Source: Anaeramoeba ignava BMAN (taxonomy: Eukaryota > Protista > Anaeramoebae). Taken from it: DNA of 64,000 bases. Under the pieces are notes generated by a model. The model did no database searches. It saw nothing but the letters and a program-made list of their open reading frames with translations, and was not told the DNA's origin. A program made the position numbers and the translations under genes. This document shows positions 4,106 through 17,025 of the stretch, piece by piece (the stretch's first letter is position 1; each line of letters opens with the position of its first letter). The stretch lies in assembly GCA_028826165.1 (NCBI GenBank), contig JAPDFW010000059.1, positions 1,674,001 through 1,738,000 on the forward strand, written 5' to 3'.

Positions 4106-5659
4106 TTATTTGTTGGTTTCTTTTTGGGGATTGAGATTATCAAGAAGAGAATCGGATTTTTTCTGAAGATTTTGAACTTTCTTTTTATTTTCAACAATTT
4201 TCCTACTAAGAACAGCAGGACCACGAAGACAACCACCTTTGCAAGCCATAACCTCAAGAAGATTATAAGGTGTTTTATGGTGAGCAAATTTCTCGAGACA
4301 CTCAGCAGTTTTATCTGAAAAACCATCGATTTTATGTATATTAACTTTAGCTTTGTTGCCGATTATTGAAGCAACAGCAGCTGAAACGCCACCAGTATAA
4401 GGATAGCCACGACCCTCTTTATGGGCGTTGCCAAAGAGAAGGTTTGTGTCTGGTTTTACTTTAATAGGATCGATGCCCTTTGCAAGGAAAAGACAAGCGA
4501 GTTCTTCGAAGGTGATTGCGTAGTCGACAATAGGGTCTTCGATAGATTCCTGTTTTTTTGAGAAACACGGACCGATAAAAACGCATATGGCGTTGGGAAT
4601 ATTGTTCTTGACAAGCTCTGCAGTATAATGCATTGGGGTTGGTGTTTGAGAGACGAATCCCTTGACGGTAGGAATGTGTTTATGAACAAGTTCAAGATAT
4701 GAAAAACAGCACGACGTTGTCATAACGGTATTTGGATCTGCGTTGATTCTTTCCAAAAACTCCTTTGCCTCGTGCTGGGTTGTAACGTCTGCACCATGAG
4801 CGACCTCAACGACTTGGCTGAAGCCGAGCATTTTGATAGCAGCAACGATCTGAAAGAGATCTGATTTCCCGAATTGTCCGACAATAGAAGGCGCCAGCAT
4901 TGCCACAACCTGTCTGGAGCGTCGTGTGTCCTTAATGAATTTGCAGACGTCGATAACCTGTGATTTATGCGCAATTGCGCCGAACAAACACGAATCAACG
5001 CATGCGCCGCAGGATATGCACTTGTTGAAATCGAGGACCTGAAAACCAGTTTTTGGATTGCGAGTAATTGCCTGGACAGGGCAGGACTCCTCGCAGGGTA
5101 TTGGGATACGTATGATAGAATGATACGGGCAGGAACGCATGCAGTTGCCGCACTTGATGCACTTTCCTGGATCGATTTTCGCTTTCGCATTAGGCAGTAT
5201 ACTAATCGCATCTTTTGGACAGGAATTTACACACGGTTTCGCAAAGCATCCTGCACACGCATCTGTTACGATGTATTGTGATTGGACACAATGCTCACAT
5301 GCGATGTCCATGATCGTTAGAATTGGTCGCGTTATTTTGGTCCTATTTAATGCTCTTTGTGCATATACTGATAATGGTGTCCAATCCATATCAATTTCAT
5401 CCGCTCCAAATCCTAATCCTGCCATGATTCTTTGCTTCAATACTGCCCGTTCTTTGTACTGGCAACACCGTATTGGAACTCGATCTTTCGGTAAAAGTTT
5501 TACTGGTAAAGAATCTACTAATTCCACTAATTTGTCCTGAAATGTTAATTTCGCTATCTCAATTAATACCATTCGTACATATCTAACTGCTTCGTTTCCA
5601 ACTCTTTGTTTTTGTGTAAAGTTTTCTTGCCAATCTAATTTTCTTGATACATAACTCAT
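4106..5659 (-). CDS. Monomeric [FeFe]-hydrogenase with N-terminal ferredoxin-type clusters (group B-like), intronless
   Basis: RCCQYKER/ACEHC N-terminal Cys motif. Ferredoxin motifs CAGCFAKPCVNSCP, CIKCGNCMRSCP, CISCGACVDSC. H-cluster motifs TSCCFSY, GPCFSKKQE, EVMACKGGCLRGP. Confidence 0.9.
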   Translation of the reverse strand: MSYVSRKLDWQENFTQKQRVGNEAVRYVRMVLIEIAKLTFQDKLVELVDSLPVKLLPKDRVPIRCCQYKERAVLKQRIMAGLGFGADEIDMDWTPLSVYAQRALNRTKITRPILTIMDIACEHCVQSQYIVTDACAGCFAKPCVNSCPKDAISILPNAKAKIDPGKCIKCGNCMRSCPYHSIIRIPIPCEESCPVQAITRNPKTGFQVLDFNKCISCGACVDSCLFGAIAHKSQVIDVCKFIKDTRRSRQVVAMLAPSIVGQFGKSDLFQIVAAIKMLGFSQVVEVAHGADVTTQHEAKEFLERINADPNTVMTTSCCFSYLELVHKHIPTVKGFVSQTPTPMHYTAELVKNNIPNAICVFIGPCFSKKQESIEDPIVDYAITFEELACLFLAKGIDPIKVKPDTNLLFGNAHKEGRGYPYTGGVSAAVASIIGNKAKVNIHKIDGFSDKTAECLEKFAHHKTPYNLLEVMACKGGCLRGPAVLSRKIVENKKKVQNLQKKSDSLLDNLNPQKETNK

Positions 5660-5989
5660 TTTTCTTTTCTTATTTTATTTTTTTTTTTATTTTATTTTGA
5701 GGAAAGAAATGATTTTTTTATTTTTTATTATTTTTTTTTTTCATCTTTTTTTCTTTTCTCTTCCACGTGTTTAATTATTTGGGTTCTTTTTCCAAAGTCC
5801 CCTTTTTTTTTTCTTTTTATAAAAATTATTTTTAATCCAAAAACTAAACAAAATCAAATTAAATCCAAATCAAAAACAAGATCAAAATTAAATCCAAATC
5901 CAAAAACAAAATTGAAACAAGATCAAAAACAAAAACAAAAACAAGATCAAAATCAAATCCAAAAACAAAATCAAATCAAATTATTTAAA

Positions 5990-7318: not shown

Positions 7319-9567
7319 ATGTCAGTTTATTTGATAATTTTGTTTTCAATTCTCAGTATAACATTAGCAGATCCAACACCACCAACCTGGCCAGAAAAGG
7401 TAAAAATAATTAAAATAATAAAAATTAAAATAAAAATAATTAAATTAAAAAAATAAAAAAAGTATCACGTTGAGTTTGTATTTTCACTTCCGTATGCAAA
7501 TTTACATGAAACAACAACAGTGGATTACGACAACACAACAATTCAAGAAAGAATACTTTTTTACAACGGATTAGCAAGTGAATTTCTTCTTGAAACAGAC
7601 ACTTACGATATCATTGTTACTCAAACAAATCAAACCTGTTTCAAAAACATGGAACCTCATGCTACAAATATCACTCTTATTCCAATGTTTCCTGACTTAA
7701 CTCAATGGACTTATATCGGTCAAAATGTTGTTCGTGGATTTTTGTGTGATTCTTGGCAATGGATTTATACTCCTGATGGGTTTAATAAAACTAATGTTTA
7801 TAATTTCTATGTTGATACTTCTTCAGGTCAACCTATTCAATATCATATGCTTGGTTATGATGTGGTTTTTGGTTCTCATTTCGATGAATATGTGTAATTA
7901 ATTCAATTCAAAATTAAAATTCATTTATAAAATTAAAATTAAAATTAATTAAAATTCATTTATAAAATCAATTAAAATTAAAATTTAAAATTAAAATTAA
8001 AATTAAAATTAAAATTAAAATTAAAATTAAAATTAAAATTAAAATTAAAATTAAAATTAAAATTAAAATTAAAATTAAAATTAAAATTAAAATTAAAATT
8101 AAAATTAAAAATTGTTAGTCTTGATTATTATACCTATATCCCAAATTATGTAGATCCAAATGCCTTTACTTTACCTTCAATTTGTGATCATCCTCATAAT
8201 AATATTCGTAAATAACTTAAATTTTCAATTTTCTTTTTTTAATTTTCTTCTTCATTTTGATTTATTTATTATTTATTTATTATTTATTATTTAGCTCATC
8301 AATTTGGAAGAAATTCAAGACTTTTAAAAAAACTTTTCCCAACAATACCTTCTAAACCAGATTCTCTTTTTGAATCCTTTATGAAGAAATATTCCAAAAA
8401 TTATGAATCTGTGGATGAATTTACAAAAAGAAAAGCTATTTTTTACGAAAATTATCAATATATTGAAGATTTTAATCAGAAAAATTCACACATGCAATGT
8501 AAATAGAAAAAGATATTAAATAAATATTAAATAAATAATAAAAATTAAATATTAAATAAATATTAAATAAAAATTAAATAAATATTAAATAAAAATATTG
8601 ATTTGATTATTCCTTTTTTTTTTGTTAGTGGCTATAAATCATTTTGCTGATATGACTCTTGATGAATTCCGCAAATATATGTTGATTCCAAAAGAAATCG
8701 CAGCAAAACAAAAAGAATTCCCAATGGAAACTTACCAACCCCAAATGAAATTTTCAGATCTTCCAACAGAATTTAGTTGGCTTGATTACGGCGCAGTTTC
8801 TCCAGTTAAAGACCAAGCTGTTTGTGGATCTTGTTGGGCATTTAGTACTGTAGGTGCTATTGAAGGTCAATATTTCCTTGCAACAGGCGAACTCAAATTA
8901 TTTAGTGAACAAAATGTAATTGATTGTTCATGGAATGCTACTCATCCTTCATATGGTTGTGATGGAAGTATTCAAGCTTTTGCTTATGAAGCTATTAAAG
9001 GAATGGGTGGAATTGAATTGGAATCTGATTATCCTTATTTAGGAATTACTGGGTATTTTTCATTTTAAAAAATTCAAAATTAATATTAAATTTATAATCA
9101 AAATATTTTTTTAGTTATTGTGGTTTTTCTCAAGAAAAAAGAGCTGCTGCAATTCAATCTTATTATAACATTACAAATTCTGAAGAAGCTGTTAAAGAAG
9201 CACTTTATAATATGGGTCCACTTGCAAGTAAACTTTCTTTGTTTTTTCTTCTAAATAATTATAAATATAAATTTATTGATTCAAATTTTTTCATCATTTA
9301 GTTTCTTATGATGCTGGTCATTTAAGTATGGTTTATTATTCAAGTGGAGTTTATAGTGATAAAAATTGTTCTTCAACTAATCTTGATCATTCAGTTCTTT
9401 TAGTTGGTTGGGGAGATTATCCTGGAACTGGAGAACCTTATTGGTTAATTAAAAATTCTTGGAGTACTCATTGGGGTGATAATGGATATTTCTACATCTC
9501 AAGAAAAAACAATATGTGTGGAGTTACAACTCAAGCTTCTTTCCCAGTTCTTCAAAGAATTCACTAA
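7319..9567 (+). CDS. Papain-family (C1A) cysteine protease with signal peptide, N-terminal extension (26/29-kDa proteinase/CfaD-like) and I29 prodomain; multi-exon
   Basis: Signal peptide MSVYLIILFSILSITLA, NHFADMT prodomain, QAVCGSCWAFS (catalytic Cys), LDHSVLLVGWG (His), YWLIKNSWSTHWG (Asn). Confidence 0.9.
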
Positions 9568-9892: not shown

Positions 9893-12800
9893 TTAAAATT
9901 TCATTGCTCGAGTCGCATAACGTGCAACAGCTTTTTTCAAACCATCAATCCAAGGTTGAAGTTTTGTAAGATAACTAAAAAAAAATAATATAAAATAATA
10001 TAAAATAAAAAAAAAGAAAAGTAAATGAATTTTTGAATTTTTACCCATCAGGATCTTCATAATCTCCTGCTCCAAATTCTGTAATCTCCTTTGCTCCTAA
10101 CTTTTTCATTTGAGATTCAAGCAATCTCCCTGCATGATTAAAGTGTGTGTATGTTGAATTTCCAAGTCCAAAAATGGAATATCTTAAAGACTTTAATCTT
10201 GTTGTCAATCTCTGCAAATCTTCCCAAAAATGAATTGCATTTTCAGGAAAAGAACCTTCCCAAAAAGTAGAAGTAACAAGAACAACAAGCTTTTCACTCG
10301 ATAATTTGCTAACATTAAAACTGTTCATTTCAAGAAGACGAGCTTTGATTTTGAATTGCAACAAACTTTGAGTAATGCGAATTGCTGCCATTTCAGCAGT
10401 GCCTGTTTGAGATCCAAAAAGAACTAAAACAGAGTTATTTTCGTTCAATCCTTCCATTGCAAATCTAAACATGTCGGTTGTTTTGGCTGCTTGTATTTCG
10501 ATATGCCGCTGATTGGCTGTATAATGAGTATGCAGTAACTTCTCTGATAAAGGAGACTTGGGTTTTTGCAAAAACTCTTCATAAAGCTCGTTGATTTTCT
10601 CGTTGTTATGTGATTTGCGGAAAGGCAATGCAAATTCATTGTTATAAACTGCTTGTATTCTCTTCGGCAAGATATTGATATTTGAACGGGGTTGTCCACC
10701 TCCTCCAATACATCCTCCAGGACATGCCATCATCTCGCAAAAATCAAATGAAATCTCTCCCTTCTTGAATTGATGGATTAGTTTGTGAATTGCGGCTCCG
10801 CTGTTGACAACAACAACCCGAAGCTTTCGTTCTCCAAAATCAACATCTGCTTTTTTCGTGTTTTCTAATCCTCTTAAATCCTGGAAAACAAGTCTTTGGA
10901 ATACTTTTCCTGTTTGTAATTCATAGGCAGTTCGTAACGCAGCTTCCTTCATTAAACAAAACAAAAAAAAAAAGGAATAATTTGGGAATTTGTCAGTCAA
11001 TCAATCGAAATCGTTTCCAATTTTGTTTTAAAATTTTTCTATTTTCTATTTTCTATTTTCTTTTTTCTTTTAAAATTACCATAACTCCTCCTGTAGCTGC
11101 AAATAAAGAACCTGAACCAGATGATTTTCCGAGTGGATCATCAAAATCACTTTCTTCAAGAGAATCCCAATCAATATTGATATCTCGGAACATTCGGGCG
11201 ATCTCTCGGACGGTCAAACTAACATCAACATCCCAAACTCCATTCACAATCATTTGCTCTCTTCGTAACTCTTGTTTCTTACCAGTGCAAGGCATAATAG
11301 TAACGCAGTAAATGTCTTTTGGTTCAGTCTCGATCTTTTGAGCAAAAAATGATTTGACAATCGCACCAAACATTTGTTGAGGTGATTTTGCTGATGAAAT
11401 GTGAGGAATCAACTCGGGATAAAGCTATATAATAAAATTAAGAATTCAAATCAGAAAAATTCAATTCAAAAAAAAAAATCAAAAAATCAAAAATAAAAAC
11501 GTACTTTTTCAACCATATTGATCCATGCAGGACAGCATGATGTAAACATTGGTAACACTGCATTTGGATCGCTAAGTCTTTGCAAAAGTTCAGTTCCTTC
11601 TTCCATAATTGTTAAATCTGCAAAGAATTGAACATCAAAAACATACTCAAAACCAAGAAGACGAAGAGCAGCAACAAATTTACCAGCAGAAATAGTTCCA
11701 GGTTCCCTATCAAACTCCTCGGAAATAGTAACACGCACTGATGGTGCAATTCCAACAACAAGCTTTTTCTTCTTAGCCTTGAGTTGAGTGAGAACGTCTC
11801 CTGTGTTATCATAAGCAGATATTGCTCCTGTTGGACAAAACACAGAACACTGCCCACACGCTATGCATTGTGTTTCTGATAAAAACTTCCCTCGTGTGCG
11901 GAAAACAGTCTCAATTGCTCCAATAGAACGCGCAGGAAAAGATATAACAGACATGCCTTGGATTCGGTCGCACACTTGTGCACATCTAGCACAATCAATG
12001 CATTTGGATAAATCAACAGAAATTGCATAATTGGAGTTGTCAATAAATGTATCAACAATCCGATCAAGAAGTTTTCCAAACTCTGTAGAATGATCAAATT
12101 TCTCTTCTTTAGCTCGTAAAACTCTGCTGCGTTGCTTCATTCGGAGCTCCAATATCGCTTGTCGTTGTTGATCCTTCACAGAAACAGTGTTTGTGAAAAT
12201 CTTCATCCCTTCTCGCACTTGCGTTGCACAGGCACATGCCTTTCGAGAGTTATTCAACGAACTTTCAATTTCCACAACGCAGCACTTGCATGTCGATAAG
12301 GGATGAAGACGCGGATGATAGCACAGAGAGTATATTTCTACTCCAATAACCCTGCAAGCTTCCACAATATTCAGATTACTTGGAACAGAATATTGCTTTC
12401 CATTGACCCAAATTGTAACGTTATCCGATTGTATTTTTGTCGATAAAATATCTTGGTTTTGTTGGTTGGTTTCGGTTTGCTGTTGTTTCTGTTCTTTGCT
12501 CTCCTCAATCAAAGATCCAGAACGACTCGAGGTTTTGAGCTTAACTTTTGGCCAGCGGATTACCAAAGAGTCTTTTCCTCCAGAAATCAAAGTTCCAGAT
12601 TCCGTAATGGACATACTTGTGACCGCTTTCAAATGCCCTTCATAAAGAGCTTGGCATGACTGGGTTTTAATTGACCAGAGACGAATAGTGTCATCTTGTG
12701 AAGATGTTAAAATTCGGTCGTGAAGAACAATCATATCATAAATTTTTCCTTGATGTCCTTCAAGAAATACAAAGGAATCTTTTTTACTCCCTTTGACTCG

Positions 12801-15360
12801 GATTATTCCAATTGTGTTATCTTCCGAGCAAGTGTACAAATAGTTTTTTAAAACAGAAATGTGTGTAATTGGGCCTGAATGACCAACAAATTTTCGGATT
12901 AATTTCCCATTCTATATAAATAAATATATAAATAAATATATAAATAAATATATAAATAAATATATAAATAAATATATAAATAAATATATAAATAAATTTA
13001 TAAATAAATATATAAATAAATTTATAAATAAATATATAAATAAATTTATAAATAAATTTATAAATAAATATATAAATATAAATAAATAAATAAATATATA
13101 AATAAAATATAAATAAAAATATAAATAAATATATAAATAAATAAATAAATAAAAAATATATAAATAAAATATATAAAAAATAATAAATAAATATATAAAT
13201 AAATATATAAATAAATATATAAATAAAATATATAAATAAATAAATATATAAAATAAATATAAAATAAATATATATAAATAAATATATAAAATAAATATAT
13301 AAATAAATAAATAAAATATATAAATAAATATAAATTTTTAAATAAATAAAAATAAATATAAATAAATATATAAATAAATATATAAAATAAAAATAAATAA
13401 ATAAATAAATAAAAATATAAACAAAATATAAATAAAAATATAACAACAAATAAATAAATATAAAAAAAAATATAAATAAATTATTATAAATAAATTTATA
13501 AAATAAAATATATAAATAAATTTATAAATAAATTTATAAATAAATATATAAATAAATATATAAATAAATATATAAATAAATAAAAAATTAAATATATAAA
13601 TAAAATATAAATAAAATATAAAAAAATATATATAAATAAAATATAAATAAATAAAAAAATATAAATAAAATTTATAAAATATATAATAAATAAATAAAAT
13701 ATAAATAAATATATAAATAAATTTATAAAATAATTTTTAAAATAATTTTTAAATAATTTTTAAATAATTTTTAAATAAAAATATAAATAAATATATAAAT
13801 AAAATTAAATAAATATATAAATAAATATATAAATAAATTTATAAATAAATTTATAAATAAATATATAAATAAATATATAATTAAATATATAAATAATTTT
13901 TTAAATAAATTTATAAATAAATATATAAATAATTTTTTAAATAAATTTATAAATAAATATATAAATAAAATTTCTGAAATATATAAATAAATATATAATT
14001 AAATATATAAATAAATTTATAAATTTTTAAATAAATATATAAATAAATATATAAATAAATTTGTAAATAAATATATAAATAAATTTATAAATAAAGTTGT
14101 AATTTGCTTACTTTGATATCCCACGCATTTATAGATTTATCTATTATAGAAAATTTAAATTTTAATTGTATAAATAAATTTTAATTTTAATTTGAAAATG
14201 TATATTTACCTGCAGAACCTGTGAAAAGAGTTTTGGTATTTTCATCCAAAAATATGCATAAAACACTATCTGAATGACCAGAAAATTCAATAGATTTTTT
14301 CTTTTTCTAATTTCATTTTCAAAAGAACACAATAAAAAAAAAATTTGAATAAGAAAAAAAGGATAAAAATTACAGTTAAATCCCAAGAAATAGCTTTATC
14401 ATCATCAGCACAAGTAAACAGCATTGGAGCTTTAATGGAAGAATAAATAATTTGGTTTATTTTACCCAAATGACCTTCAAAATTGGAAATTTCTTTTCCT
14501 GTTTTAAGATCCCATTCTCGAATAGTTTTATCCATTCCTCCTGAAAATAAACGTTGTGATTGATCAAAACATAAAGCTGTAATTGGTCCTTGATGACCTT
14601 GAAATTGTGCAATTGATGTTTTTTTGTTAATATCCCAAGCTACAATTAATCCATTCACATCAGCACTAATCAGAACATCATTTTGAATCTTTAAAAGCGA
14701 AATTGGTGCTAAATGCTTTTGGAAAGTACCAATTTTAAGTCCAGTCTGATAAAAAAAAAAGAAACAAAAAAAAATAAAAAAGAAACAAAAAAGAAAGAAA
14801 GAAAAGAAACAAAAGAGAAAGAAAAAAAATAAATATGGTTAAGTTAAAATGGTTATTTAGTTATTTTTGTTTTTTTTTTTTAAAAAAGATTCAAATTTTG
14901 TTTTCCGGTTGATCAAAAATAAATAAGTAAATAATTTTTTTTATTTTTGCGAGTTCAAAGATTTTAAAGAGTAAAAAATGCCAGAAAACATTATGAAAAG
15001 GTGAAAAACACAAAACTTTTAAATTTTAAATTTATTTTTTGATTTTTGGTTTTTCTTACACTTGTTTTGTATTGATAAATCATATAATCATCTCCAGCAG
15101 AAAAATAATGTTCTTCAGTTGCAATAACAACATTTACAGGACCTGAATGATCTTTTGCAACTGAAAGAGGCTTTAAAATATTCTGTAAATATCAAAACAA
15201 AAAAAAAACAAAAAATAAATTTTTAAAATTTAAAAGTTAAAAAGAAAAAAATCTGTCATCATAAATCGTTAAAAAAATTAAAATAAAAACTTTAAAAAAA
15301 ATAATTTACACATGCAACTTGTCTCCATTGCTCAAATAAAAGTTGATATGAAGCATCCAT
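9893..15360 (-). CDS. WD40-repeat / [FeFe]-hydrogenase (group A-like) / flavodoxin fusion protein, multi-exon
   Basis: Spliced by eye from ATG 15360 (MDASYQLLFEQWRQVAC). About eight GH...WD-type repeats, then a [2Fe-2S] domain (LCYHPRL...CKCCVVE...ACAT) and 2x[4Fe-4S] (CIDCARCAQVC, CIACGQCSVFCP). H-cluster motifs TSCCPAW, MPCTGKKQE, EMMACPGGCIGGGGQP, small-subunit-like RKSHNN...LLHTHY, then flavodoxin LFGSQTGTAE...TSTFWEG...FGLGNSTY. Confidence 0.88.
12912..14111 (-). repeat. AT-rich low-complexity intron of the WD40-hydrogenase gene
   Basis: (ATAAATAAAT)n-like array bounded by GTAAG and TAG on the minus strand; joins AWDIK to NGKLIRKF in frame. Confidence 0.8.
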
Positions 15361-15479: not shown

Positions 15480-17025
15480 CAAATTAAATAAAACAGATCA
15501 AACTAAATAAAATAGATTAAATTAAATTGATTAAATTAAATTGATTGATCAAATTAAATAGATTAAATTAAATTAAATTGATTTGAATAAATTAAATTAA
15601 ATTGATTAAATTAAATAGATTAAATTAAATTAAATTAAATTAAATTAAATTAAATTAAATTAATTAAATTAGATTAAATTAAATTAATTAAATTGATTAA
15701 ATTAAATTAAATTAAATTAAATTAAATTAAATTAAATTAAATTAAATTAATTAAATTAAAATTAAATTAAATAAATTAAATAGATTAAATTGATTAAATT
15801 AAATTAAATTAAATTAAATTAAATTAAATTGATTAAATTAAATTAAATTAAATTAAATTAAATTGAATTAAATTAAATTAAATAGATTAAATAAATTAAA
15901 TAAAATTGAATTAAATTAAATTAAATTAAAATCAAATTAAATTAAATTAAATTAAATTGATTAAATTAAATTGATTAAATTAAATTGATTAAATTAAATT
16001 GATTAAATTAAATTAAATTAAATTAATTGTAAATTAAATTAAATTAAATTAAATTAAATTAAATTAAATTAAATTAAATAGATTAAATTAAATTAAATTA
16101 AATTAAAATTAAATTGATTAAATTAAATTAAATTGATTTAAATTAAATTAAATTAAATTAAATTAAATTGAAATTAAATTTAAATTAAATTAAAATTAAA
16201 TTAAATTGATTAAATTAAATTGATTAAATTAAATTAAATTAAATAAAATTAAATTAAATTGATTAAAATTAAAAGATTAAAATAAAAATTGATTAAATTA
16301 AATTAAATTAAATTGATTAAATTAAATTGATCAAATTAAATTAAATTAAATTAAAATTAAATTTAAATTAAATTGATTAAATTAAATTAAATTAAATTAA
16401 ATTAAATTAAATTAAATTAAATTAAATTAAATTAAATTAAATTAAATTAAAATAAATTGATTAAATTAATTGATTAAATTAAATAGATTAAATTAAATTA
16501 AATTAAATTAATTAAAATTAAATAGATTAAAATAGATTTGATTAAATTAAATAGAAATAGATTTGATTAAATTAAATAGATTAAATTAAATAGATTTGAT
16601 TAAAATTAAATAGATTAAATTAAATAAAATTGATTAAATTAAATTAAAATTAGATTAAATTAAATTAATTAAATTAAATTAGATTAAATTAAATTGATTA
16701 AAATTAAATTAAATTTAAATTGATTAAATTAAATTGATTAAATTAAATTGATTAAATTAAATTGATTAAATTAAATTGATTAAATTAAATTGAATTGATT
16801 AAATTAAATAGATTAAATTGAATTAAATTGATTAAATTAAATAGATTTGATTAAATTGAATAAATTAAATTAAATAAAATAAATTAAAATTAAATTAAAT
16901 TGATTAAATTAAATTGATTAAATTAAATTGATTAAATTAAATTGATTAAATTAAATTGATTAAATTAAATAGATTAAATAGATTAAATTAAATTGATTAA
17001 ATTAAATTGAATAAGATAAAATTAA
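15480..17025. repeat. Intergenic (AAATT)n satellite with AAATTGATT variants
   Basis: About 1.5 kb pentamer array. Confidence 0.9.

What the first reader, a model, noticed from the sequence alone, without database searches (positions are those of the whole stretch)
9893..15360. WD40 beta-propeller fused to an [FeFe]-hydrogenase and a flavodoxin
Seen: within one continuous exon (about 11504-12911) WD40 repeats (EGHQGKI...IRLWS; EGHLKAV...VIRW) run in frame through a Q-rich linker into the [2Fe-2S] domain, 2x[4Fe-4S] domain and TSCCPAW, so the fusion does not depend on a splice model. Upstream exons bring the total to about eight WD repeats, enough for a full propeller. All three H-cluster motifs are canonical, and a flavodoxin follows. 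Established: flavodoxin/CysJ-type C-terminal fusions occur in hydrogenases of anaerobic protists, and WD40 is a eukaryotic interaction scaffold. I do not know of a described WD40-hydrogenase. Inference: a scaffolded or localised H2-producing enzyme, or an H2/redox sensor coupled to eukaryotic signalling. No obvious N-terminal organellar presequence is visible. The CIA pathway pairs hydrogenase-like Nar1 with the WD40 protein Cia1, but the motifs here are those of a true hydrogenase, so any parallel would be convergent.
Basis: partly seen in the sequence, partly recalled or inferred. Interest (0 to 1): 0.88.

Follow-up and report, generated by a model that had tools for sequence, protein, structure and literature searches.

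The report
WD40-propeller iron hydrogenase of Anaeramoeba
This is a real nine-exon gene of the anaerobic amoeba Anaeramoeba ignava that joins an eight-bladed WD40 docking domain to an apparently fully working hydrogen-making enzyme and a flavodoxin, a combination found only in this genus, already deposited as plain "iron hydrogenase" and not discussed in any paper I could search.

Summary
On the minus strand, 15360-9893, nine GT..AG exons encode a 1135-aa protein. It matches the deposited Anaeramoeba ignava protein KAJ5077271.1 ("iron hydrogenase") exon for exon.

One exon (12911-11505) runs in frame from WD repeats 6-8 through a Q/K/E-rich linker into the [2Fe-2S] and 2x[4Fe-4S] domains and TSCCPAW. 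The N-terminal domain models as an eight-bladed propeller.

The hydrogenase core passes the group A cut-off. It keeps all three H-cluster motifs and the CpI proton-path residues, but lacks the His-ligated [4Fe-4S] cluster. A flavodoxin without an FAD/NADPH module follows.

Searches of 1.84 and 5.8 billion proteins found this architecture only in Anaeramoeba (4 genes in A. ignava, at least 7 in A. flamelloides). These form one clade next to Trimastix/Paratrimastix HydA-flavodoxin enzymes.

New here: the same propeller module also heads three BAR(-SH3) proteins of A. ignava.

This scan has already reported the paralogues on other pieces of this genome, with the same reading.

Most likely it is a cytosolic, active hydrogenase tethered by its propeller to a partner or site. 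The genome paper does not mention the architecture. The 2021 Anaeramoeba paper could not be read.

The parts
9893..15360 (-). Whole coding region, nine exons, 1135 aa plus stop; equals GenBank KAJ5077271.1 (P0001)
15310..15360 (-). Exon 1 (aa 1-17): start codon and a short N-terminal helix; net charge not positive, so no presequence-like stretch
15060..15182 (-). Exon 2 (aa 18-58): WD repeat 1
14374..14745 (-). Exon 3 (aa 59-182): WD repeats 2-4
14210..14306 (-). Exon 4 (aa 183-214 plus 1 nt): first part of WD repeat 5
   Evidence: read against P0001
14112..14140 (-). Exon 5 (aa 215-224): end of WD repeat 5 (DKSINAWDIK)
   Evidence: read against P0001
12912..14111 (-). Intron 5, 1.2 kb of TA-rich simple repeats.
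11505..12911 (-). Exon 6 (aa 225-693): WD repeats 6-8, linker, [2Fe-2S], 2x[4Fe-4S] and the start of the H-domain with TSCCPAW. This is the in-frame junction
12429..12548 (-). Linker (aa 346-385), rich in Q/K/E, with low model confidence
12186..12425 (-). [2Fe-2S] domain (Fer2_4, aa 387-466)
11814..12017 (-). Two [4Fe-4S] motifs, CIDCARCAQVC and CIACGQCSVFCP (aa 523-590). The segment before them (aa 467-522) has no Cys or His where CpI holds its His-ligated cluster
11529..11543 (-). H-cluster motif L1, TSCCP (aa 681-685)
11080..11424 (-). Exon 7 (aa 694-808): middle of the H-domain, with L2 MPCTGKKQE at 11295-11269
10045..10946 (-). Exon 8 (aa 809-1109): end of the H-domain with L3 at 10736-10689, small-subunit domain at 10673-10515, and flavodoxin from 10424 with GSQTGTAE
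9893..9974 (-). Exon 9 (aa 1110-1135 plus stop): last helix of the flavodoxin domain

Best explanation
SHOWN. The locus is one gene of Anaeramoeba ignava. Its product has four parts:
- an eight-bladed WD40 propeller (aa 18-345);
- a roughly 40-residue low-complexity tether;
- a group A [FeFe]-hydrogenase with [2Fe-2S], two [4Fe-4S], a complete H-domain and a fused small-subunit domain;
- an FMN-type flavodoxin with no FAD/NADPH module.

The architecture is a genus-restricted gene family with a single origin. It lies inside the eukaryotic HydA-flavodoxin/CysJ clade.

INFERRED.
- The protein is cytosolic, because it has no presequence and its closest relatives in Paratrimastix are cytosolic.
- HydE, HydF and HydG, which the genome encodes, mature it.
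- It turns over H2: electrons pass between the flavodoxin and/or the N-terminal Fe-S chain and the H-cluster.
- The propeller takes no part in catalysis. It hangs on a flexible tether and docks the enzyme to a partner protein or a cell site.
- The closest relatives of this propeller head BAR(-SH3) proteins, so that site may be a curved membrane. This last step is the weakest.
For: - Gene and fusion: the frame is open across the junction inside exon 6, and the exons match the deposited 1135-aa protein.
- Independent copies: paralogues P0152 and P0153 also carry the junction inside one exon. A. flamelloides, assembled separately, has at least seven such genes.
- Restricted range: only Anaeramoeba proteins cover both halves of the query, among 1.84 billion representatives and 5.8 billion clusters.
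- Single origin: the 11 fused proteins plus one truncated protein form a clade with SH-aLRT 100. It sits next to Trimastix and Paratrimastix HydA-flavodoxin, inside the CysJ/flavodoxin-fused clade.
- Catalytic competence: TIGR02512 scores 480 bits against a cut-off of 406. L1, L2 and L3 are intact. The equivalents of CpI residues C299, E279, E282, R286, S319, K358, M353 and M497 are conserved. The FMN motifs are invariant in the family. HydE, HydF and HydG loci are present.
- Propeller: pLDDT is 91.9 and the fit to eight-bladed Tako8 is TM 0.94.
- Tether: the full-length model has pTM 0.45 and pLDDT below 50 over residues 351-386.
- Cytosol: the N-terminus is not positively charged (read from P0001). 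Paratrimastix HydA paralogues were cytosolic by LOPIT-DC (PMC9746703).
- Shared module: the three best non-hydrogenase WD matches in the genome are WD-BAR(-SH3) proteins. In a tree they group with the hydrogenase-borne modules at SH-aLRT 100.
Against: - There is no transcript evidence for this copy.
- There is no activity, localisation or partner data.
- The invariant WD residues are the structural H/S/D/W set, so no conserved binding face stands out.
- Two family members (P0004, P0007) have degenerate L1 and L2 motifs, so the family is not uniformly catalytic.
- The WD module is of the consensus-like kind that also matches many bacterial WD40 proteins at about 30% identity. The link to the BAR proteins therefore rests on one quick tree and on hit ranks within the genome.
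- The low pTM may only reflect an 11-sequence alignment.
Confidence: 0.6

Rival explanations
1. H2 or redox sensor: the hydrogenase domain senses H2 and the WD40 propeller passes the signal to eukaryotic signalling partners, as bacterial group C HydS enzymes do through PAS domains.
For: Sensory [FeFe]-hydrogenases fused to signalling domains exist in bacteria (named in PMC11216029). Two family members have degenerate catalytic motifs. WD40 domains are common in signalling.
Against: This copy passes the group A cut-off and keeps the proton-transfer Cys and the whole CpI proton path. It has no PAS or other signalling output domain. It carries an electron-transfer flavodoxin, which fits turnover better than sensing.
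Confidence: 0.12
2. The propeller is a regulatory handle rather than a localisation device. It could make the enzyme a substrate or adaptor of a ubiquitin-ligase-type complex, or drive oligomerisation, so that enzyme level or state follows oxygen or redox conditions.
For: The best natural structural matches include eight-bladed substrate receptors Fbw7 and Cdc4. A. flamelloides P0157 carries a TRIM-like B-box, coiled coil and filamin in front of the propeller.
Against: There is no F-box, DWD box or other ligase-coupling element in P0001. The structural matches reflect the generic eight-bladed fold at 17-25% identity. P0157 may be a merged gene model.
Confidence: 0.15
3. Fe-S cluster assembly analogue: a fused counterpart of the Nar1-Cia1 pair of the cytosolic iron-sulfur assembly pathway.
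For: Nar1 is hydrogenase-like and binds a complex that contains the WD40 protein Cia1 (PMC13451876, listed).
Against: The hydrogenase part is a true group A enzyme with all H-cluster motifs and a small-subunit domain. It groups with HydA-flavodoxin enzymes. No CIAO1/Cia1 entry is among the best 60 solved WD40 chains. The propeller has eight blades, against seven in Cia1 by my own knowledge.
Confidence: 0.04
4. Artefact: two neighbouring genes merged by misassembly or by the gene model.
For: No reads could be laid on the locus. Intron 5 is a 1.2-kb simple repeat that long-read assemblies can get wrong.
Against: The junction lies inside one uninterrupted exon, away from the repeat. WD repeat 5 and 6 logic continues across intron 5. 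The same architecture recurs at three other loci of this genome and in at least seven genes of a separately assembled species. Five runs from two studies hold 83-97% of the sampled words of 11000-13000.
Confidence: 0.03

Closest known systems
HydA-flavodoxin enzymes of Preaxostyla (Trimastix marina EP00771_P001054, Paratrimastix pyriformis KAJ4456293.1) and of Blastocystis
   Same: Same order of domains: [2Fe-2S], 2x[4Fe-4S], H-domain, small-subunit domain, flavodoxin. No Pfam NADH-G_4Fe-4S_3 hit was listed for the two Preaxostyla enzymes. They are the nearest outgroup in the tree.
   Different: They have no WD40 propeller, only 53-77 residues before the [2Fe-2S] domain.
CysJ-fused [FeFe]-hydrogenases of anaerobic protists (Carpediemonas, Barthelona, Pygsuia, Paratrimastix)
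   Same: Same hydrogenase core followed by an FMN domain. They fall in the same starred 33-row clade.
   Different: They continue into FAD- and NAD(P)H-binding domains (PF00667, PF00175), which this protein lacks. They have no WD40.
Clostridium pasteurianum CpI and the HydA subunits of bifurcating HydABC (PDB 4xdc, 8a6t, 7q4v)
   Same: They align end to end over the hydrogenase core. All H-cluster ligands and proton-path residues are conserved.
   Different: CpI and HydABC HydA hold a His-ligated [4Fe-4S] cluster (H-x3-C-x2-C-x5-C) between the [2Fe-2S] and the dicluster domain. Here that segment has no Cys or His. They have no WD40 and no flavodoxin.
Eight-bladed WD40 propellers (designed Tako8; natural ODA16/DAW1, Rsa4/Notchless, Fbw7/Cdc4)
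   Same: Same fold and blade number: TM 0.94 to Tako8 and TMq 0.80-0.86 to the natural ones.
   Different: Identity is only 17-25% and no orthology is implied. None of them is fused to a redox enzyme.
WD40-BAR(-SH3) proteins of A. ignava (KAJ-deposited 'wd repeat-containing protein pop1', P0287; two paralogues)
   Same: Collinear eight-repeat N-terminal propeller, 32% identical over 334 residues with 9 gaps, including the closing W-P motif. One clade with the hydrogenase-borne modules.
   Different: The C-terminal payload is a BAR domain with or without SH3, not a hydrogenase.

Membership tests
[FeFe]-hydrogenase, group A (TIGR02512) | Profile score over the curated cut-off | tested here: met
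   480.1 bits against a cut-off of 405.95
[FeFe]-hydrogenase, group A (TIGR02512) | H-cluster motifs L1 TSCCP, L2 MPCxxKxxE and L3 ExMxCxxGCxxGGGQP | tested here: met
   TSCCPAW at aa 681, MPCTGKKQE at aa 737, EMMACPGGCIGGGGQP at aa 879
[FeFe]-hydrogenase, group A (TIGR02512) | Proton-transfer residues equivalent to CpI C299, E279, E282, R286 and S319 | tested here: met
   All are identical in the alignment to 4xdc_A
[FeFe]-hydrogenase, group A (TIGR02512) | H2 turnover by the matured enzyme | not testable with these tools
   Needs expression with HydEFG, or a [2Fe] mimic, and an assay
M3-type (CpI-like) accessory cluster set | [2Fe-2S] plus a His-ligated [4Fe-4S] plus two [4Fe-4S] | tested here: not met
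   [2Fe-2S] and both [4Fe-4S] motifs are present. No PF10588 hit was listed, and there is no Cys or His in aa 467-522 where CpI has H94/C98/C101/C107. The M3-type A. ignava genes L001 and L002 do have PF10588
Eukaryotic HydA-flavodoxin/CysJ-fused clade | Placement of the hydrogenase core within that clade | tested here: met
   Starred sets of 14 rows (99) and 33 rows (100) hold it together with the Fld- and CysJ-fused enzymes
Eukaryotic HydA-flavodoxin/CysJ-fused clade | C-terminal FMN domain with the GSQTGTAE-type motif | tested here: met
   Flavodoxin_1 at 2e-28. G986, S987, Q988, T989 and G990 are invariant in the family
Eukaryotic HydA-flavodoxin/CysJ-fused clade | FAD- and NAD(P)H-binding domains (CysJ subtype only) | tested here: not met
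   The protein ends 18 residues after the flavodoxin match. There is no PF00667 or PF00175 hit. It is therefore the flavodoxin-only subtype
WD40 beta-propeller | WD repeats closing into a propeller | tested here: met
   Pfam WD40 and many propeller families match. The AF2 model has pLDDT 91.9 and eight blades
Cia1/CIAO1 | Specific sequence kinship to Cia1, and a seven-bladed propeller | tested here: not met
   No CIAO1/Cia1 chain is among the best 60 of 431 PDB matches. The model has eight blades. The blade number of Cia1 is from my own knowledge
Sensory [FeFe]-hydrogenase (group C, HydS-like) | PAS or other signalling domain and an altered proton path | tested here: not met
   No such domain is present and the proton path is intact
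Nar1/NARF | Hydrogenase-like fold without H-cluster motifs or a small-subunit domain | tested here: not met
   All motifs and Fe_hyd_SSU are present

The most novel reading that the evidence does not exclude
The eight-bladed propeller may be an Anaeramoeba-specific address module shared by BAR(-SH3) membrane-shaping proteins and by active hydrogenases. In that reading it docks cytosolic H2 production onto the symbiosome membrane network, which holds the H2-consuming sulfate reducers. This would be a eukaryotic invention for spatially organised interspecies hydrogen transfer.
Probability: 0.15. Interest if true: 0.85.

Novelty: new variant of a known kind. Interest (0 to 1): 0.6.

Why it matters
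[FeFe]-hydrogenases of anaerobic protists were known alone or with flavodoxin/CysJ tails. A protein-docking propeller on a catalytically intact enzyme, kept in at least 11 genes of two species, suggests that where hydrogen is made matters to these cells.

Anaeramoeba lives by passing H2 to sulfate-reducing partners. These sit in a membrane network next to its hydrogenosomes (PMC11550330). A tethered cytosolic hydrogenase would add a second, positioned H2 source.

The family also contains a natural series, from intact to degenerate active sites. That series is useful for studying how pseudo-enzymes arise.

The propeller and the BAR-linked relatives give concrete handles (pull-downs, localisation) for a question that is otherwise hard to approach in an uncultivable-in-isolation protist.

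Tried and rejected
- Read mapping. The whole window file did serve once as the subject of a local tblastn with P0001, with no hit in that stretch.
- Transcript-derived fragments. A search across the junction for proteins of 260-830 aa found only generic WD40 proteins.
- Cyanophora P0002 (4122 aa) ranked second in the exhaustive search. It is a merged model of seven tandem hydrogenases without WD40, so I rejected it.
- Literature. Four word searches found no WD40-hydrogenase description. The genome paper and its supplements do not mention it. Stairs et al. 2021, Curr Biol 31:5605, is not held, so a description there cannot be excluded.
- The last homologue search, with the WD-BAR protein, was swamped by bacterial multi-repeat WD40 proteins. 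It gave nothing on other payloads.
- dN/dS between paralogues was not attempted, because at 61% or lower identity in an 80% A+T genome silent sites are saturated.
Whole-protein analyses used the deposited protein P0001 that a tool returned, and window searches went exon by exon by reference.


Full report
**What is in the sequence.**
The window is about 80% A+T. On the minus strand between 15360 and 9893 there is a chain of open frames with WD40, Fe-S, hydrogenase and flavodoxin content.

Reading the DNA gives nine exons with GT..AG borders:
- 15360-15310
- 15182-15060
- 14745-14374
- 14306-14210
- 14140-14112
- 12911-11505
- 11424-11080
- 10946-10045
- 9974-9893

They total 3408 nt, which is 1135 codons plus TAA.

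Exon 6 alone is 1407 nt. It runs without interruption from WD repeats 6-8 through a Q/K/E-rich linker into the [2Fe-2S] domain, two CxxCxxCxxxC(P) motifs and TSCCPAW. The fusion therefore does not rest on any splice choice.

The WD repeat pattern also continues cleanly across the 1.2-kb TA-repeat intron 5 (…WDIK | NGKLIRKFVGH…).

Window searches went exon by exon by reference. Whole-protein work used the deposited protein returned by a search.

**Whose gene it is.**
An exhaustive HMMER search of 1.84 billion representatives with the exon-6 frame returned P0001 first. P0001 is KAJ5077271.1, "iron hydrogenase [Anaeramoeba ignava]", 1135 aa, on a 1.80-Mb contig.

It matches exon 6 at 469/470. The other long exons match at 100%. 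The two short exons were checked by eye.

The window is therefore A. ignava BMAN (Metamonada, Anaeramoebidae).

**How far the architecture reaches.**
Only Anaeramoeba proteins cover both halves of the query:
- A. ignava: P0001, P0152 (61% identity), P0153 (48%) and P0004 (37%).
- A. flamelloides: P0154, P0155, P0156, P0003, P0157, P0158 and P0007.

Every other hit covers the WD part or the hydrogenase part alone. The second-ranked Cyanophora protein is a merged model of seven tandem hydrogenases without WD40.

The A. ignava paralogues map to contigs C104, C138 and C127. In P0152 and P0153 the junction again lies inside one exon, and P0152 shares the intron positions of this gene.

This scan has already reported those paralogues on other pieces of the genome, with the same reading.

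**Origin.**
I built a tree of 72 hydrogenase cores (quick IQ-TREE, LG+C20).
- The 11 fused proteins plus one truncated A. flamelloides protein form one clade (SH-aLRT 100).
- The next starred set (99) adds the HydA-flavodoxin enzymes of Trimastix marina and Paratrimastix pyriformis.
- The next starred set (100) adds the CysJ- and flavodoxin-fused enzymes of Barthelona, Pygsuia, Paratrimastix, Carpediemonas and Blastocystis.
- The two M3-type A. ignava hydrogenases (L001, L002) sit elsewhere, with fungal and bacterial enzymes. They carry the NuoG-type cluster domain and N-terminal extensions.

So a propeller was added once, in the Anaeramoeba lineage, to a metamonad HydA-flavodoxin gene. The gene then multiplied.

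**Is the enzyme intact?**
- The core passes NCBIfam "[FeFe] hydrogenase, group A" at 480 bits against a cut-off of 406.
- L1, L2 and L3 are canonical.
- Aligned to CpI (4xdc), the equivalents of C299, E279, E282, R286, S319, M353, K358 and M497 and the cluster cysteines are all conserved.
- The segment that in CpI and HydABC carries the His-ligated [4Fe-4S] cluster has no Cys or His here. No PF10588 hit was listed for this protein or for the CysJ-fused relatives.
- The flavodoxin keeps GSQTGTAE and the other FMN-site motifs, which are invariant in the family. The protein ends soon after, so there is no FAD/NADPH module.
- The genome holds HydE (309 bits, over the cut-off). It also holds exon-wise HydG and HydF matches.
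- By contrast, P0004 and P0007 have degenerate L1 and L2, and P0004 falls below the group A cut-off.

**The propeller.**
- An AF2 model of aa 1-352 built from the 11-member alignment has pLDDT 91.9 and pTM 0.88. It shows one N-terminal helix and 33 strands.
- Foldseek fits it to the eight-bladed designer protein Tako8 at TM 0.94. It fits the natural eight-bladed propellers ODA16, Rsa4/Notchless and Fbw7/Cdc4 at TMq 0.80-0.86. Seven-bladed ones reach only about 0.65.
- By sequence it is a consensus-like WD40. The best solved matches are designed or cyanobacterial repeats, and no CIAO1/Cia1 is in the best 60.
- The invariant residues are the structural His/Ser/Asp/Trp set.
- The full-length model has good domains but pTM 0.45 and pLDDT below 50 over residues 351-386. 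This fits a propeller on a flexible tether, although the alignment is shallow.

**A new lead.**
Within the A. ignava genome, the three best non-hydrogenase matches to the propeller are proteins of 776, 752 and 747 aa. Each has the same collinear eight-repeat N-terminal module followed by a BAR domain, and two of them also have SH3.

The best of them, P0287, deposited as "pop1", aligns over 334 residues at 32% identity with 9 gaps, from the first repeat to the closing W-P motif.

In a tree of WD modules, these three and the 11 hydrogenase-borne modules form one side of a branch (SH-aLRT 100, length 0.84).

The propeller thus looks like a lineage-specific module placed in front of at least two payloads, one of them membrane-shaping. 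This rests on a quick tree and on a sample drawn from my own searches.

**Most likely working.**
The protein has no presequence-like N-terminus. HydA paralogues of Paratrimastix, a close relative, were cytosolic by LOPIT-DC (PMC9746703).

I therefore read this as a cytosolic, catalytically competent hydrogenase. Electrons would enter or leave through the flavodoxin and the N-terminal Fe-S chain. The propeller would tether the enzyme to a partner or a site.

The symbiosome biology of Anaeramoeba makes a membrane-proximal site attractive. In it, H2-consuming Desulfobacteraceae sit in a host membrane network beside the hydrogenosomes (PMC11550330). Nothing here tests that idea.

**What could not be done.**
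There is therefore no read-level check of the assembly or of transcription for this copy.

The window file as a whole was the subject of one local tblastn.

Indirect support for the assembly has two parts. Five runs from two studies hold 83-97% of the sampled words of 11000-13000. The architecture also recurs in independent loci and assemblies.

**Novelty.**
No paper in the held library links WD40 with an [FeFe]-hydrogenase. The genome paper and its supplements do not mention it. The 2021 Current Biology paper on Anaeramoeba hydrogenosomes is not held and might show it.

I class this as a new variant of a known kind: a HydA-flavodoxin fusion with an added propeller. It is real, deposited and apparently undiscussed.

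Noticed in passing
window 4109-5674 (-): A single-exon 522-aa ORF lies 4.2 kb downstream of the gene. It scores as a group B1 'monomeric [FeFe] hydrogenase' (TIGR04105, 492 bits against a cut-off of 450). It has extra ferredoxin-like clusters and the motifs TSCCF, GPCFSKKQE and EVMACKGGC. It is a second, unrelated hydrogenase type next door.
   Followed up: partly
L013:3068-5395 (+) = G000:C70; L014:907-3162 (-) = G000:C107; L015:2421-4661 (+) = G000:C104: Three A. ignava proteins have the same eight-repeat WD40 module at the N-terminus, followed by a BAR domain. Two also have SH3. I do not know this architecture from elsewhere. Their propellers group with the hydrogenase-borne ones.
   Followed up: partly
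P0157 (A. flamelloides, 1707 aa): This family member has a B-box zinc finger, a coiled coil and filamin repeats in front of WD40-HydA-flavodoxin, a TRIM-like head. It could be a real further fusion or a merged gene model.
   Followed up: no
P0004 (G000:C127) and P0007 (A. flamelloides): Two divergent family members keep the Fe-S cysteines and L3 but have degenerate L1 and L2. P0004 falls below the group A cut-off. They are likely non-catalytic copies. Earlier notes of this scan say the same.
   Followed up: partly
window 15500-16400 and beyond; window 12912-14111: A long (TTAAT)n-like satellite lies directly upstream of the start codon. Intron 5 is 1.2 kb of TA-rich simple repeat.
   Followed up: no
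window 8622-9567 (+): Exons of a papain-family (cathepsin L-like) cysteine protease with the CGSCWAF active-site motif lie just downstream of the hydrogenase gene's 3' end.
   Followed up: no
G000:C104:980194-982917: A HydF-like maturase locus (three exon matches, 238 bits in sum) lies about 27 kb from the WD40-hydrogenase paralogue P0152 on the same contig.
   Followed up: no
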